From: Octopus sinensis
Lineage: Eukaryota
Reading direction: 5' to 3'
Assembly (NCBI RefSeq): GCF_006345805.1
Contig: NW_021826392.1
Location: 1 to 12,866, forward strand
DNA: 12,866 nucleotides
Shown here: one piece after another, positions 2,000 through 12,866 of the stretch
How positions within the stretch are numbered: position 1 is the first letter of the stretch
Layout: each line of letters opens with the position of its first letter
Program-made: the position numbers and the translations under genes
Notes under the pieces: generated by a model
Databases searched by the model: none
Told to the model about the DNA's origin: nothing
The model's input: the letters and a program-made list of their open reading frames with translations, nothing else

Positions 2000-2228
2000 G
2001 GTAATCCTTTCTACAAATTGTACAAGGTCTGAAATTTTTTGGGGGGTGGGGTGTAGTAGATTACATAACATCGACCCCGGTGTTTCACTGGTACTTAATT
2101 TATCGACCCCGAAAAGATGAAAGGTAAAGTAGACCGCGGCGGAATTTGATCTCAGAGCGTAGCAACGAGCGAAATGCTGCAAAGCATTTCGTCCAGAGTG
2201 CTAACGATTCGGCCTTAACATCCACCTT
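2000..2228 (-). mobile_element. tRNA-derived CORE-SINE (OR1/OR2-like), tail type 1, near full length
   Basis: Core ATCGACCCC...GGTACTTAATTTATCGACCCCGAAAAGATGAAAGG, B-box region GGAATTTGATCTC and head GCTAACGATTC on the reverse strand; tail ACAAGGTCTGAAATTTTTTGGGGGGTGGGG. Confidence 0.9.
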
Positions 2229-2234
2229 AATAAT

Positions 2235-2404
2235 GAGCAGTTTTGGAAAGAGGGTCTAAGGCAATAATATCGACCCCAGTGCTCAACAGGTGCTTATTTC
2301 ATCGACCCCTAAATGATGAAATGCAGGTGTCGATCTCAGCAGAATTTCAACTCAGAACATAAAGACGGACGAAATACTGCTAACCATTCTTCCTGGTTGT
2401 CGCC
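2235..2404 (-). mobile_element. CORE-SINE copy with internal head deletion
   Basis: Core and B-box present. About 20 nt between two GCTAA direct repeats of the head are missing relative to the copy at 2437-2650. Confidence 0.85.
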
Positions 2405-2436
2405 GTGAAAATAGCAATAACAATAACAATAATAAT

Positions 2437-2650
2437 GGTTTCAGATTTTGCCAAAAGGGAAGACATTTTGGTGGAGGGGACTAGTCCATTACATTGACTC
2501 GAGTCTTTCACTTGTAATTAATTTATCGACCCAGAAAGGATGAAAGGCAAAGTCGACCTCAGCAGAATTTGAAATCAGAACTTAACAGCAAACGAAATAC
2601 CGCTAAGCATTTCGCCCGGCGTGCTAACGATTCTGCCAGCTCGCCGCCTT
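2437..2650 (-). mobile_element. CORE-SINE, full length, tail type 1
   Basis: Intact head GATTCTGCCAGCTCGCCGCC (A-box TGGCAGAATCG on minus), core AGAAAGGATGAAAGGCAAAGTCGACCTC, tail GGTTTCAGATTTTG...TTTTGGTGGAGGGG; flanked by (AAT)n. Confidence 0.93.
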
Positions 2651-6862: not shown

Positions 6863-7059
6863 GGTGACGAGTTGGCAGAATCGTTAGCACACCGGGTAAA
6901 ATACCCTGCAGCAGTATTTCCTCTGTCTTCGTGTTCTGAGTTCAAATTCCGCTGAGGTCGACTTTGCCTTTCATTCTTTTGGGGGTCGATGAATTGTGTT
7001 CCAATGAATCACTGGGGTCGATGTAATAGACTAGTCCCGTCTCCCCAAAATTTCAGACC
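6863..7059 (+). mobile_element. CORE-SINE, tail type 1, with 12-bp TSD
   Basis: A-box TGGCAGAATCG, B-box GAGTTCAAATTCC, core GGTCGACTTTGCCTTTCATTC, tail CTCCCCAAAATTTCAGACC; TSD TATTATTATTAA at 6851-6862 and 7060-7071. Confidence 0.93.
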
Positions 7060-7976
7060 TATTATTATTAAAGCAGAAACTGTTATTTAGTTTAAAAGAA
7101 TTATATATATATAAAATAATGTATAATATATTTACACATAAGGTCTGCAAATCTAACGGAGGCGCGAAAAACACTATGAGATCCATAAAGTGCAGTTCTT
7201 GGTGGTTCAAATATGCAATTTATGTGGGACTCTTTTTAAAACATTGCCTGGTTTAAAAAGCCACGTAAGACACGGTGATAGATCTAAGGTGTTTAGAACA
7301 AAAGATTGTCAGACTCTGCTTAAGGACTAGATAGCTACTATATATATATATATGATTTTCTCATCAGTCGGTTTCCCAGAAGGTCTTAGTGGTTTCACGT
7401 TATATACATTCACACACACACTCCCAACTGAACGAGTGTTAATTACGGGGCAGGCTAGAAGTGTCAAACATTGTCACCAATACGCCATCTTGTCTGCACT
7501 ATCTTATTTCTCTCATTGACATCATGTCATGTGATCTAGCATCAACACCGCTTCCCTCCTCCTGCTTCTGTCTCCTCCACCCTGCATCTTAGTAAATCGA
7601 TCAAACCTCTCTACAGGCACCATCACAACAACCACCGCGGCACCATACCACTTTGTCTCGACGCTCCTCGACACAGACTGATCCGGGCCCCATCATTAAC
7701 ACCTCCAGACAACTACATCGCACCATTACTCTCTTGCTCTCACTCTACCACACGACGACACATAGATTGTGACCAGCCTTGTCACAATCTATGTCACACT
7801 GAACCTCTCTGAAAACTACGTTAAGGTTACGCATGTCAATGGAGTTCTCAGCCACTTGCACGTTAATTTCGCTAGCAGGCTGTTCCGTCGTTCCGTTGAT
7901 CGAATCTGCTGGAACACTCGTCGGCGTAAACGACGGAGAACCGGGTCATATGTACGTAGGTATATACGTACGTACG

Positions 7977-8160
7977 TATTTCGTCCGCCGCTACGTTCTG
8001 AGTTCAAATTCCGCCGAGGTCGACTTTACCTTTCATCCTTTCGGGGTCAATAAATTAAGTACCAGTTACGCACTGGGGATCGATGTAATCGACTTAACCC
8101 GTTTGTCTGTCCTTGTTTGTCCTCTCTGTGTTTAGCCCCTTTGTGGGTAATAAAGAAATA
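7977..8160 (+). mobile_element. 5'-truncated CORE-SINE, tail type 2, with 22-bp TSD
   Basis: Starts at TATTTCGTCC, has B-box and core, ends GTGGGTAATAAAGAAATA; TAGGTATATACGTACGTACGTA is repeated at 7957-7978 and 8159-8180. Confidence 0.95.
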
Positions 8161-8500
8161 GGTATATACGTACGTACGTACGTACGTATGTATGTATGTA
8201 TGTATATATGTATGTATGTGTGTGTGTATGTATGCATGTATGTGTGTATGTATGTATATGGCGAAGCATACCACTGAATATATGTGTGTTTGCGTGTGTG
8301 TAGATGTATCTGTAAAGGTGGTGGTAGGTAGTGGTGATATAGTGATATATATGTGTGTATATGTGTGTGTATATGTATCTATATATGAATGTGTATGTGT
8401 ATATATGTATTTGTATGTGTATATATGTATTTGGCAAAGCATACCAGCATATATATATGTGTGTGTGTGTGTGTAAATGTGTATATGTGTAGATGTGTCT
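8161..8500. repeat. (TACG)/(TATG)/(TG)n block containing a diverged ~175-190-bp tandem duplication
   Basis: TGGC(G/A)AAGCATACCA at 8259 and 8432; GTGTAGATGT...GGTGGTGG at 8298 and 8487. Confidence 0.85.
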
Positions 8501-8504
8501 AAAA

Positions 8505-9020
8505 TGGTGGTGGTGGTGGTTGTGGTGATATTCATACACCGTACCCCTATAAAACTACAACACCACCATCATCCGCAACCCCATCCCCGCACACACACAC
8601 ACACACCACACACCACACCACCACCATGTCACTCCTAAGCACCACGCCACCACAGGAGTGCACTACCATGCTGTCACACCAGACACACCACCGTCACTAC
8701 ACCGCAGCTACGTAGGCCGTACCACATCACCCGTCTAACCACACCGCCGCCGCCACCACCACGCCACCACCATGCTGCCACCACCACGCCACCACCATGC
8801 CGCCACGATGCCATGTTTCGTCGCCGCCACACCGCCACCACCATAACCACCACCACCATAACCACCACCACCACCACAGCCAGCAATGCTTCCATGTCTC
8901 AATCACAGATATATATTGCCATCTTCACAACCATACCCACTACCACCATCGCCAACGATACCATGTTCTACCAATGCCATCGCCACTGCTGCCAACAACA
9001 ACAATAACAACAACAACAAC
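8505..9020. repeat. Degenerate (CCA/CAC)n-rich array
   Basis: Direct reading; includes repeated CGCCACCACCATGC units. Confidence 0.9.
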
Positions 9021-9159
9021 CCTGCCGTGTCTTAACCGCCATGTTGATAGTAGGAGGTCAAACGGGGTTAACGTTATCGTTTCTCCAAGGTCGAGGTCAT
9101 TGGTCGTACGATGTAAAAGATGAATTAAAATGCATCTGTTAATGGAGACAGAATGCTGA

Positions 9160-10696: not shown

Positions 10697-10973
10697 TTGA
10701 ACAAGCTGATTAAGCGAAACTGGAAGTTCTAATCAACTCAGAGTTGATTAATACATTTGACTTTAGAATCCAGTCACCAGTAGATGCTCTTGTATTCTTA
10801 TAAACTGATCGACAATGCCAATTGCTGCAATTTATACAAATATGCTTGGGAGGCAAGACGTTTGTTTCACAACCGCAATGGTTCCGGATGCAGTTTGTCT
10901 GCGCGTCATACGTGAGATATGCAGGGATACTGCATCTGCAGTTCCATTATTTAAGCAGAATGGTATGAATATA

Positions 10974-11206
10974 TATTTCTTTACTACCCACAAGGGGCTA
11001 AACACAGAGGAGACAAACAAGGACAGACAAAGGGATTAAGTCGATTACATCGACCCCAGTGCGTAACTGGTACTTAATTTATCGACCCCGGAAGGATGAA
11101 AGGCAAAGTCGACCTCGGCGGAATTTGAACTCGGAACGTAACGGCAGACGAAATACGGCAACGCATTTCGCCCGGCGTGCTAACGTTTCTGCCAGCTCGC
11201 CGCCTT
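10974..11206 (-). mobile_element. Full-length young CORE-SINE, tail type 2, with 16-bp TSD
   Basis: Minus strand reads GGCGGCGAGCTGGCAGAAACGTTAGC...GAGTTCAAATTCC...core...GTGGGTAGTAAAGAAATA; TSD GAATGGTATGAATATA at 10958-10973 and 11214-11229. Confidence 0.96.
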
Positions 11207-11689
11207 CTGGTATGAATGGTATGAATATAAGTTTCCTGTACCTTGTGTGTAAGTTCCCATAGTATTTAAAATTGGTCATTCCAAGCATAGTGTTTGTAAA
11301 CGGTGTTATTATTAACACACGCACACGCACATAACGATGCATGGAAAAGCATTAGTGAGCATGTGTGTATGTGTGTGTAGTGTTTGTGTGCGTTCGCTTC
11401 TATAAATAGCACTCACTCGATTACCCTTGATAATTTCCAGTCTTGTAGACTAATCAGTCATATATCATTTGTCAGACAAAATTCATACATCATCTGTTAG
11501 TCACAGCATTGCGAAGACTAGTTAATGACGTCATATCATCTGTTCGCCATATTCGTATATGATTCCGTTGTGTGATTACGACAAACTAGAGTTTAACGGG
11601 CAAAGAGATTCCCTAACTGTATCGTTATTGTCATCATCAGTCGGATGGTGCGATGGCAGAATCGTTAGAGCGCCGGATCGGAAATATTT

Positions 11690-11861
11690 ATTTTTTTCAT
11701 TGCCCACGAGGGGCTAAACATAGAGGGGACAAACAAGGACAGACAAACGGATTAAGTCGATTATACCCACCCCAGTGCGTAACTGGTACTTATTTAATCG
11801 ACCCCGAAAGGATGAAGGGCAAAGTCGACCTCGGCGAAATTTGAACTCAGAACGTAACGGC
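11690..11861 (-). mobile_element. 5'-truncated CORE-SINE, tail type 2 (3' module of composite insertion)
   Basis: Tail TTGCCCACGAGGGGCTAAAC, core, B-box; truncated at AACGTAACGGC. Confidence 0.93.
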
Positions 11862-11922
11862 CACGATGCCATGTTTCGTCGCCGCCACACCGCCACCACC
11901 GCCACCACCACCACCACCACCA

Positions 11923-12153
11923 CCTATTTCTTTACTGCCCACAAGGGGCTAAACATAGAGGGGACAAACAAGGACAGACAAACGAATTAAGTCGATTACA
12001 TCGACCCCTAGTGCGTAACTTAATTTATCGACCCTGAAAGGATGAAAACCAAAGTCGACCTCGGTGGAATTTGCACTCAGAACGTAACGGCAGACGAAAT
12101 ACCGCTAAGCATTTCGCCCGGCGTGCTAACGTTTCTGCCAGCTCGCCGTCCTT
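11923..12153 (-). mobile_element. Full-length CORE-SINE, tail type 2 (5' module of composite insertion)
   Basis: CCTATTTCTTTACTGCCCAC tail through GTTTCTGCCAGCTCGCC head. Confidence 0.95.
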
Positions 12154-12505
12154 CGGATCTGAAATATTTCAAACCCTACCAATATCAAATTTGCTTTTTC
12201 TTTCTTCAGGATCGATCAAATAAAGTACGACTAAAATACCGAGGTCGACGACATACCCCTCCCCTCAAAATTTTTGGCCTTCTGCTTAAATCAGGGGCAA
12301 TTATAATCATTATCATTAATGGGTGGTTACACTGGGTGGAGTATCGGGGTAGAGGATGAACAGTGGGTGGAGTATCGGCGTGGCACAATGGCAAAGTTTG
12401 TAATATATTCGCATACCTCATTCACCAAATTCTGTGTGTTTGTATCCATGTTTGAAACAGTTTGTAAACAACTTCTCTTTCATGGTTTTTATTGAAGCGT
12501 TAAAC

Positions 12506-12620
12506 AGGCAGAATCTTTAGCGCGCCGGACGAAATGCTCAGAGACATTTCTTCCGGCTTTACGTCATAAATTCAAGTTCCACCCCATCAGAACGACTTTG
12601 TCTTCCATTCTTTTTGGATC
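12506..12620 (+). mobile_element. Old CORE-SINE head/core fragment
   Basis: GGCAGAATCTTTAGCGCGCCGGACGAAATGC...TTCAAGTTCC...CGACTTTGTCTTCCATTC. Confidence 0.75.
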
Positions 12621-12639: not shown

Positions 12640-12866
12640 TGTTCTTGTTGTTATTGTTGTTGTTCTTCCTCTCCTTCTTCTCCTACTTCCTCTCCTTCTT
12701 CTTCTTCCTCCCCTTCTTCTCCTTTTTTCTTCTTTTTCTTCTTCTTCTTCTTCCTCTCCTTCTTCTCTTTCTTCTCTTTCTTCTCCTTCATCCTCTCCTC
12801 CTCCTCCTTCTTCCTCTCCTTCTTCTCCTACTTCCTCTCCTTCTTCTTCTTCCTCCCCTTCTTCTC
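12640..12866. repeat. (GTT)n then (CTT/CCT)n polypyrimidine tract, running off the window
   Basis: Direct reading; contains an exact 56-bp internal duplication (12666-12721 = 12811-12866). Confidence 0.95.

What the first reader, a model, noticed from the sequence alone, without database searches (positions are those of the whole stretch)
11674..12169. Tripartite chimeric retro-insertion: SINE + 41 bp copied from 3 kb upstream + SINE, within one TSD and nested in an older SINE
Seen: CGGATC(G/T)GAAATATTT (11674-11689 and 12154-12169) brackets a 5'-truncated SINE (11690-11861), a spacer, and a full-length SINE (11923-12153). The spacer's first 41 bp (11860-11900, GCCACGATGCCATGTTTCGTCGCCGCCACACCGCCACCACC) are identical to 8802-8842, where no SINE is adjacent and the sequence is embedded in related CCA repeats, so that site is the likelier source. 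Junctions show microhomology: GC with the first SINE, and (CCA)n with the ...AATAGGT end of the second. Inference: one target-primed event with two template jumps (SINE RNA, then local DNA or pre-mRNA, then a second SINE RNA). That would be cis-capture of neighbouring sequence by a SINE-mobilising RT and would report physical proximity at the time of insertion.
Basis: partly seen in the sequence, partly recalled or inferred. Interest (0 to 1): 0.78.

Follow-up and report, generated by a model that had tools for sequence, protein, structure and literature searches.

The report
SINE dimer with locally copied filler
Two SINE copies inside one target-site duplication are this octopus-like genome's ordinary head-to-tail SINE dimer, and the only unusual part is a 62-base filler at the joint between them, 41 bases of which were copied from a CCA-rich tract about 3 kb upstream by a template switch whose timing and enzyme cannot be settled from sequence alone.

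Summary
A 16-bp target-site duplication (TSD; 11674-11689 and 12154-12169, 15/16) brackets a 5'-truncated SINE (11690-11861), a 62-nt spacer and a full-length SINE (11923-12153), all inside an older SINE. Spacer bases 11860-11900 equal 8802-8842 exactly, and that 41-mer occurs only at those two places in the 2.72-Gb genome.

The interpretation needs trimming. "SINE + 5'-truncated SINE in one TSD" is the family norm. The canonical unit junction (…AAATAGG|TATTTCGTCTGCC…, second unit starting at consensus position about 51) occurs 40,430 times. At least 42% of one 3'-end variant run straight into another unit, and several dimers sit inside a single TSD. So one unusual step is needed, not two: about 10 nt of the canonical junction are replaced by a filler copied in cis, with 2-3 nt of microhomology at each side. 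Non-SINE filler of this length is unique among about 6,900 junctions sharing the same exact anchors.

My odds are:
- about 0.45 for a reverse-transcriptase (RT) detour during insertion;
- about 0.35 for later templated repair at the junction;
- about 0.08 for an assembly artefact.

Template-switch chimeras, including tripartite ones, are already known. Interest is modest.

The parts
11674..11689 (.). Left copy of the 16-bp target-site duplication (host SINE sequence)
   Evidence: 15/16 identical to 12154-12169. Host-family relatives carry this stretch once and contiguously.
11690..11861 (-). SINE1: 5'-truncated unit, consensus position about 63 to the 3' end (ends ...AAATA). It lacks the A box. 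Bases 11860-11861 (GC) are shared with the filler.
   Evidence: Alignment to the 48-copy consensus: about 13-15 substitutions in 172 nt, about 7 of them private.
11860..11900 (+). 41-nt exact copy of 8802-8842, in direct orientation: the first part of the filler
   Evidence: exact, the only two hits in the genome, and none of 200 shuffles gave a match.
11901..11922 (+). Rest of the filler: a GCC(ACC)n run. It aligns in register with 8843-8866 except at the donor's two ATA interruptions. It ends in (A)CC, shared with the SINE2 3' end.
   Evidence: 8802-8866 against 11860-11924, 92% over 65 nt; TRF.
11923..12153 (-). SINE2: full-length unit with A- and B-box-like motifs and the complete 3' end AAAGAAATAGG. 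It has a 6-nt internal deletion.
   Evidence: 90-94% identical to genome copies, 9 substitutions in 230 nt against the consensus.
12154..12169 (.). Right copy of the target-site duplication
11646..12303 (+). Older host SINE of a different tRNA-derived family (about 70% identical to its relatives), split by the insertion. It carries a private internal deletion of about 35 nt that lies within the TSD.
8802..8842 (+). Donor of the 41-mer
   Evidence: Its two ends belong to local tandem arrays.
8739..8877 (+). Degenerate CCA/CCG-rich tandem-repeat tract that contains the donor. It is C-rich on the + strand and G-rich on the - strand.
   Evidence: TRF. It is about 75-79% similar to many other CCA-rich tracts in the genome, but none of them holds the 41-mer.

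Best explanation
**Shown.** A head-to-tail dimer of an abundant tRNA-derived SINE sits on the minus strand. It consists of a full unit followed by a unit that lacks roughly the first 60 nt. It was inserted once, by target-primed reverse transcription, into an older SINE, and made a 16-bp TSD. This dimer form is the family's normal multimer. At the joint between the two units, about 10 nt of the canonical junction are replaced by a 62-nt filler. The first 41 nt of the filler (perhaps 65 nt) were copied, in direct orientation, from a CCA-rich tract 2.95 kb upstream on the same contig. There are 2-3 nt of microhomology at each side.

**Inferred (most likely, about 0.45).** The filler was written during the insertion itself.
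1. The first-strand cDNA is the window's + strand, growing rightwards from 11689.
2. It left the SINE1 template at position 63, about 12 nt short of the family's habitual jump point at 51-52.
3. It annealed by GC to a minus-sense template from 8802 onwards. That template was either nascent RNA or exposed G-rich single-stranded DNA.
4. It copied 41-65 nt, slipped in the CCA run, and then made the usual landing on the very 3' end of a SINE RNA (…AAATAGG). It copied that RNA to full length.

So this reading needs one detour within a routine unit-to-unit jump, not two exceptional jumps.
For: - **Structure and TSD:**
- **The dimer is the family norm:** 40,430 canonical junctions; 42% of one 3'-end variant run on into the next unit; single TSDs surround whole dimers or trimers at L032 (15/15), L029, L028 and L006.
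- **Units look like separate templates:** adjacent units are no more alike (91.6%) than units from different loci (92.1%). SINE1 and SINE2 (88.6%) carry different sub-variants. Both points fit separate templates rather than a recent DNA duplication.
- **The filler is local and unique:**
- **SINE2 keeps its exact 3' end at the filler boundary.** That is what landing on an RNA 3' end predicts.
- **The exit point lies within 12 nt of the family's fixed jump site.**
- **Rarity:** non-SINE filler of this size is the only one among the 6,920 junctions with the same exact anchors and gaps of 10-64 nt.
- **Precedent:** RT template-switch chimeras, including tripartite ones inside a single TSD and switching at specific sites, are documented (PMC2104539).
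Against: - **Age lean.** The 41-mer pair has no mismatch. The dimer's private substitutions (about 2.5% per lineage) and the TSD (1/16) predict about 2 mismatches if the filler were as old as the dimer (P(0) about 0.13). That gives roughly a 3-fold lean towards a younger filler.
- **Break hot spot.** The junction region is also a target hot spot for this family's endonuclease, with nested insertions at the same SINE-head position in L023 and L013. A later break exactly there is therefore not a great coincidence.
- **No transcript evidence.** Nothing shows a minus-sense transcript over the donor.
- **One case only,** on a 12.9-kb unplaced contig that cannot be checked against reads.
- **Microhomology is not diagnostic.** It fits DNA-level repair equally well.
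Confidence: 0.45

Rival explanations
1. Post-insertional templated repair. A canonical dimer was inserted first. Later, a break at the unit junction removed about 10 nt and was repaired by microhomology-mediated, synthesis-dependent end joining or replication template switching (TMEJ, SD-MMEJ or MMBIR type). The repair copied 41-65 nt from the CCA-rich tract 2.95 kb upstream. The break could have come from the family's own endonuclease, or from an abortive second target-primed reverse transcription (TPRT) that copied a short local RNA.
For: - The site shows a deletion-plus-insertion signature relative to the 40,430-fold canonical junction.
- There are 2-3 nt of microhomology at both sides.
- The donor is in cis and in direct orientation.
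- The 41/41 identity compares with about 2 mismatches expected if the filler were as old as the dimer, a Bayes factor of about 3 for a younger event.
- The junction and position 51-66 are a recurrent nick site: the nested insertion in L013 has a TSD equal to positions 52-66, and L023 and the window's own host SINE were hit at the same head position.
Against: - The filler abuts the exact 3' end of SINE2. A random break would rarely do that, although the hot spot softens this point.
- Templated repair insertions usually copy from within about 100 bp rather than 3 kb away (general knowledge, not tested here).
- At an internal control site, indels of 13-43 nt are almost all local tandem duplications and not foreign filler.
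Confidence: 0.35
2. Assembly or polishing artefact. The real locus has a canonical junction. The 62 nt were introduced when CCA-containing reads from the 8.8-kb tract were misplaced during consensus building or polishing of a short, microsatellite-rich, unplaced contig.
For: - The window is a whole 12,866-bp unplaced contig with no allelic copy elsewhere in the assembly.
- The copy is perfectly identical over its complex part.
- It borders a CCA run that could attract mismapped reads.
Against: - Both junctions are clean microhomology joins to precise SINE positions.
- The CCA part differs from the donor at its two ATA interruptions, which a straight copy-paste error would not produce.
- A 62-nt insertion with a 10-nt deletion is not a typical polishing error (general knowledge).
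Confidence: 0.08
3. Retrotransposition of a ready-made composite. A master locus elsewhere already had SINE-filler-SINE, or a SINE with the 41-mer just downstream, and its read-through transcript was inserted here (3' transduction or composite master).
For: Multimers of this family do propagate or arise as units inside single TSDs.
Against: - The 41-mer has only the two hits in the 2.72-Gb assembly at up to 3 mismatches. Neither is a second composite.
- The only other hit is embedded in its own tandem-repeat context and has no adjacent SINE in the required orientation.
- A donor 3 kb away would be an unexplained coincidence under this model.
Confidence: 0.04

Closest known systems
Chimeric retro-insertions made by LINE RT template switching, bipartite and tripartite (Gogvadze, Buzdin et al., PMC2104539; also U6-L1 type chimeras, PMC4476161)
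   Same: - Several retro-copied parts are fused head to tail in one orientation inside a single TSD.
- The 3' part is 5'-truncated, and the 5' part begins at its template's 3' end.
- Switching is favoured at specific positions of the first template.
   Different: - The middle part here is not a known abundant cellular RNA. It is a 41-65-nt copy of non-genic, CCA-rich sequence 2.95 kb away in cis, and an RNA origin is unproven.
- The two outer parts are the same SINE family in its habitual multimer arrangement.
- This family has no A-tail.
Complex (dimeric or oligomeric) SINEs and SINE-derived tandem arrays (definitions in SINEBase, PMC3531059); octopus tRNA-derived SINEs (Ohshima & Okada 1994, as cited there)
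   Same: - A tRNA-derived head carries A- and B-box-like motifs.
- Units are joined head to tail at a fixed point and are present in tens of thousands of copies.
- Arrays have a 184-185-bp period.
   Different: - The window's copy has foreign filler at the unit joint, which canonical multimers lack.
Templated 'filler DNA' insertions at repaired double-strand breaks (polymerase-theta or SD-MMEJ type; replication-based template switching)
   Same: There is a small deletion plus an insertion copied from nearby sequence in cis, with short microhomology at both joints.
   Different: - The donor distance of about 3 kb and the copy length of 41-65 nt are at the long end for such events (general knowledge).
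- The filler sits exactly at a retroelement unit boundary.
3' transduction by retroelements
   Same: Non-element sequence is carried inside a retro-insertion's TSD.
   Different: Transduced sequence must lie directly downstream of a source element. Here the only other copy of the 41-mer has no such element.

Membership tests
tRNA-derived SINE, head-to-tail multimer form of this genome's abundant family | Sequence match of both units to the family consensus | tested here: met
   SINE2 is 90-94% identical to genome copies and 3.9% from the consensus. SINE1 is about 8% from the consensus.
tRNA-derived SINE, head-to-tail multimer form of this genome's abundant family | Full unit followed by a unit that lacks the first 50 nt or so, both in the same orientation | tested here: met
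   SINE2 covers positions 1-231 and SINE1 runs from about 63 to the end, both on the minus strand. Canonical second units start at 51-52.
tRNA-derived SINE, head-to-tail multimer form of this genome's abundant family | Canonical junction AAATAGG|TATTTCGTCTGCC | tested here: not met
   Ten nt of the junction are replaced by 62 nt of filler. This is the only such case among the 6,920 junctions with the same exact anchors and gaps of 10-64 nt.
tRNA-derived SINE, head-to-tail multimer form of this genome's abundant family | Single TSD around the whole multimer | tested here: met
   The 16-bp TSD matches at 15/16. The same is seen at L032, L029, L028 and L006.
tRNA-derived SINE, head-to-tail multimer form of this genome's abundant family | Recognisable tRNA gene or tRNA-like fold in the head | tested here: inconclusive
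   A-box-like (TGGCAGAAACG) and B-box-like (GAGTTCAAATTCC) motifs can be read in the consensus. ARAGORN and Rfam report nothing.
RT template-switch chimera (tripartite retro-insertion) | All parts in one orientation inside one TSD, with direct fusion and the 3' part 5'-truncated | tested here: met
RT template-switch chimera (tripartite retro-insertion) | Upstream part ends exactly at its template's 3' end | tested here: met
   SINE2 ends at AAATAGG, the family's 3' end as defined by TSD-flanked solo copies.
RT template-switch chimera (tripartite retro-insertion) | Each part is a copy of an RNA | not testable with these tools
   No expression data are available for the donor tract. No gene is evident there; there are only low-complexity ORFs.
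RT template-switch chimera (tripartite retro-insertion) | All parts are of the same age | tested here: inconclusive
   There are 0 mismatches in 41 nt against about 2 expected (P about 0.13), so power is too low.
3' transduction | The carried sequence lies immediately downstream of a source element elsewhere | tested here: not met
   There are only two genome hits, and the other one has no adjacent SINE in the required orientation.
Post-insertional templated repair insertion | Microhomology at both joints, local deletion, donor in cis | tested here: met
   The joints are GC and (A)CC. Ten nt of the canonical junction are missing. The donor is 2.95 kb upstream in direct orientation.
Post-insertional templated repair insertion | An allele or orthologue exists with the unmodified (canonical) junction | not testable with these tools
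   The assembly holds no second copy of the locus. No other individuals or species are available.

The most novel reading that the evidence does not exclude
The reverse transcriptase that mobilises this SINE jumps habitually from position about 51 of one template to the 3' end of the next. On this occasion it took a detour through a G-rich, possibly R-loop-exposed, single strand or nascent RNA from 2.95 kb away on the same chromosome. The filler would then be a fossil record of which sequence was physically next to the integration complex. Screening the tens of thousands of unit junctions for such fillers could give a proximity map written by the RT.
Probability: 0.35. Interest if true: 0.55.

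Novelty: new member of a known kind. Interest (0 to 1): 0.3.

Why it matters
If the filler was written during insertion, a SINE-mobilising RT can use nearby chromosomal sequence as a template partway through an insertion. That would make chimeric junctions usable as records of spatial proximity, and it would be a route for short-range sequence shuffling. If the filler is a later repair product, it is one more example of templated filler DNA, here at a retroelement junction that is also an endonuclease hot spot.

Either way, the more general result concerns the family. At least 40,000 fixed-position unit junctions exist, at least 42% of one 3'-end variant run into another unit, and single TSDs surround whole multimers. 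Two SINEs in one TSD in this genome should therefore not be read as an exceptional double jump.

Tried and rejected
- **Age test**. I compared divergence of the two units from a 48-copy consensus, their private substitutions and the TSD mismatch with the 41/41 identity. Raw consensus divergence (3.9% and about 8%) would make the identity surprising. However, much of that divergence is shared sub-family variation. Private changes give a pairwise rate of about 5% and P(0) about 0.13, so the test is inconclusive. The copies used were chosen by similarity to SINE2, which biases its estimate downwards.\n- **Tandem duplication of one SINE.** Rejected. The two units are 88.6% identical and carry different sub-variants.\n- **Two separate insertions, or a nested insertion.** Rejected. 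Neither unit has its own TSD, and the only TSD brackets the whole block.\n- **Reverse direction (8802 copied from the spacer).** Rejected. Both ends of the 41-mer belong to tandem arrays at 8802.\n- **Internal control for foreign fillers**. That site is slippage-prone and its denominator differs, so it is not a clean control.\n- **Other foreign fillers at junctions**. Local origin of other fillers was therefore not tested.\n- **Rfam and ARAGORN** found nothing.\n- **Earlier scan notes.** None exist for this place or these words.\n- **Literature search for octopus SINE multimers** found no direct description.\n- **Species.** The contig is not human. It looks octopus-like, from its SINE and microsatellite content and from the assembly size. 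This is my inference and is not verified.

Full report
**Context**

The window is the whole of a 12,866-bp unplaced contig (C2863) of a 2.72-Gb, 13,516-contig assembly. Its SINEs match chromosomal copies at 90-94%, and it is packed with microsatellites. It is not human. The repeat landscape and assembly size look octopus-like. That is my inference, and nothing below depends on it.

**Observation**

- The 41-mer at 8802-8842 recurs exactly at 11860-11900. None of 200 shuffles gave a match.
- A whole-genome scan at up to 3 mismatches finds only these two places.
- It is the only long exact repeat in the window that is neither SINE-derived nor periodic.
- With the CCA run, the two sites align in register over 65 nt at 92%. 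All differences fall at the donor's two ATA interruptions.
- At 8802, the two ends of the 41-mer belong to local tandem arrays (TRF 8752-8813 and 8830-8877). That site is therefore the donor.

**Anatomy**

The SINE sense strand is the window's minus strand. From 48 genome copies I derived a 236-nt consensus. It begins AAGG(C/A)GGCGAGCTGGCAGAAACG and has A- and B-box-like motifs. It ends …GTGGGTAGTAAAGAAATAGG and has no A-tail. TSDs of 8-16 bp define that end.
- SINE2 (12153->11923) is full length and keeps the exact 3' end.
- SINE1 (11861->11690) starts at position 63-65 and runs to the 3' end.
- The 16-bp repeat (11674-11689 and 12154-12169, 15/16) is a real TSD of an older host SINE in + orientation. 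Relatives of the host carry that stretch once. Both TSD copies include the host copy's private junction of a roughly 35-nt deletion, so the deletion predates the insertion.

**The key correction: the dimer is normal for this family**

- Of 29 loci fetched with SINE2, about a third have a full unit followed immediately by one or more units starting at position 51-52, with a 1-2-nt overlap.
- The canonical 30-nt junction (AAAGAAATAGG|TATTTCGTCTGCCGTTACG) occurs 40,430 times at up to 2 mismatches, often in arrays with a 184-185-bp period.
- Of 44,638 exact copies of one 22-nt 3'-end variant, 18,722 (42%) run straight on into TATTTCGTC.
- Whole dimers or trimers sit inside single TSDs at L032 (15/15), L029 (12/12), L028 and L006.
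- In my sample, adjacent units are no more alike (mean 91.6%, range 86.5-97.8%) than units from different loci (92.1%). The window's pair (88.6%) is within that range.
- Some long arrays do share private junction variants between neighbouring units. Both RT-level and DNA-level array growth probably occur.

"SINE + 5'-truncated SINE in one TSD" is therefore not evidence of an exceptional event.

**What is exceptional**

Relative to the canonical junction, about 10 nt (TATTTCGTCT) are replaced by 62 nt (11861-11922). I counted junctions that share the exact anchors AAAGAAATAGG…CCGTTACGTTCTGAGTTC:

| Gap between anchors | Count | Content |
|---|---|---|
| 10-12 nt | 6,843 | canonical junction |
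| 13-29 nt | 41 | small slippage duplications |
| 30-60 nt | 31 | almost all pieces of SINE head |
| 61-64 nt | 5 | only the window's has non-SINE filler |

**Mechanism**

The first-strand cDNA of this insertion is the window's + strand, growing rightwards from 11689. The order of synthesis is SINE1, then filler, then SINE2. The filler's template must have been minus-sense, either RNA or the G-rich DNA strand of the donor tract.

Three points favour an RT detour during insertion:
- SINE2 abuts the filler with its exact 3' end, as expected for landing on an RNA end.
- The exit point (position 63) lies within 12 nt of the family's fixed jump site.
- RT template-switch chimeras, including tripartite ones in one TSD and site-specific switching, are documented (PMC2104539).

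Three points favour a later DNA-level event:
- The site has a deletion-plus-insertion signature.
- The junction and position 51-66 are a recurrent nick site for this family. The nested insertion in L013 has a TSD equal to positions 52-66. L023 and the window's own host were hit at the same head position.
- The 41/41 identity compares with about 2 mismatches expected if the filler were as old as the dimer. Private substitutions are about 2.5% per lineage and the TSD is 1/16, giving P(0) about 0.13 and roughly a 3-fold lean.

Microhomology (GC and (A)CC) fits both readings.

An assembly artefact is unlikely but cannot be excluded without reads. A composite master or 3' transduction is essentially excluded by the two-hit result and by the donor's context. 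The nearest SINE unit, at 7979-8162, is 640 bp away and wrongly oriented.

**Odds**

| Explanation | Probability |
|---|---|
| RT detour at insertion | about 0.45 |
| Later templated repair | about 0.35 |
| Assembly artefact | about 0.08 |
| Composite master or 3' transduction | about 0.04 |
| Other | remainder |

**Comparison with known systems**

The event works like a Buzdin/Gogvadze-type template-switch chimera, or alternatively like templated filler DNA at a repaired break. It meets the structural criteria of the former: one TSD, direct fusion, a truncated 3' part, and an upstream part ending at its template's 3' end. The criterion that the middle part is RNA-derived cannot be tested here. 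It fails the defining criterion of 3' transduction.

**Novelty and verdict**

This is a new member of a known kind. It is a single, unresolved case, so interest is modest (0.3). The tests that would settle it are long reads, orthologous or allelic typing, and a genome-wide filler screen.

Noticed in passing
genome-wide (e.g. G000:C1:16064918-16065867; C1:30020835-30022171): This SINE family forms head-to-tail arrays [1-231][51-231]n with a 184-185-bp period. There are 40,430 canonical junctions, and at least 42% of one 3'-end variant continue into another unit. The junction overlaps by GG, and many solo copies are followed by TAT…, which suggests that the RNA 3' end pairs with position 51-55 (GGTAT). 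Whether RT jumping or DNA-level amplification makes the arrays is open. Some arrays share private variants between neighbouring units.
   Followed up: partly
window 7957-8180: A solo 5'-truncated SINE unit (about 7979-8162, + sense) starts at about position 55, the family's jump point. It is flanked by an exact 22-nt direct repeat TAGGTATATACGTACGTACGTA (7957 and 8159) whose first bases mimic the SINE 3' end.
   Followed up: partly
window 10959-11229: A full-length SINE (10974-11206, minus sense) has a perfect 15-nt TSD (aatggtatgaatata). Between its 5' end and the right TSD copy lie 8 extra bases (ctggtatg) that repeat part of the TSD. This is a small, locally templated filler at a 5' junction.
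   Followed up: no
L023:1700-1780, L013:1720-1760; window 11674-11689: Nested insertions of this SINE into the heads of other SINEs recur at the same head position (after …GAAATGCTT / before TATTTCG). The window's host SINE was hit at the equivalent place. This suggests an endonuclease or priming hot spot inside SINE heads.
   Followed up: partly
window 11680-11689 / 12165-12175: The host (older) SINE copy lacks about 35 nt between its …GAAAT and TTCAAA… segments relative to its family. The deletion junction lies inside the TSD, so it predates the insertion.
   Followed up: yes
window 8797-9123 (+): A 108-aa His/Thr-rich ORF overlaps the donor tract. It looks like a by-product of CCA/CAC low complexity and not like a gene. 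It was not searched.
   Followed up: no
window 12663-12866: The contig ends in a TTC/CTC-rich minisatellite (21-nt period) with a 59-nt exact internal repeat (12663 and 12808). The whole contig is dense in microsatellites (AT, GT, TAGA, CAT, AAT), which may be why it is unplaced.
   Followed up: no
window 2065-2650, 2759-2900, 6868-7032, 12507-12583: Further older or fragmentary copies of related tRNA-derived SINEs (76-90% identical to SINE2) lie in both orientations.
   Followed up: no
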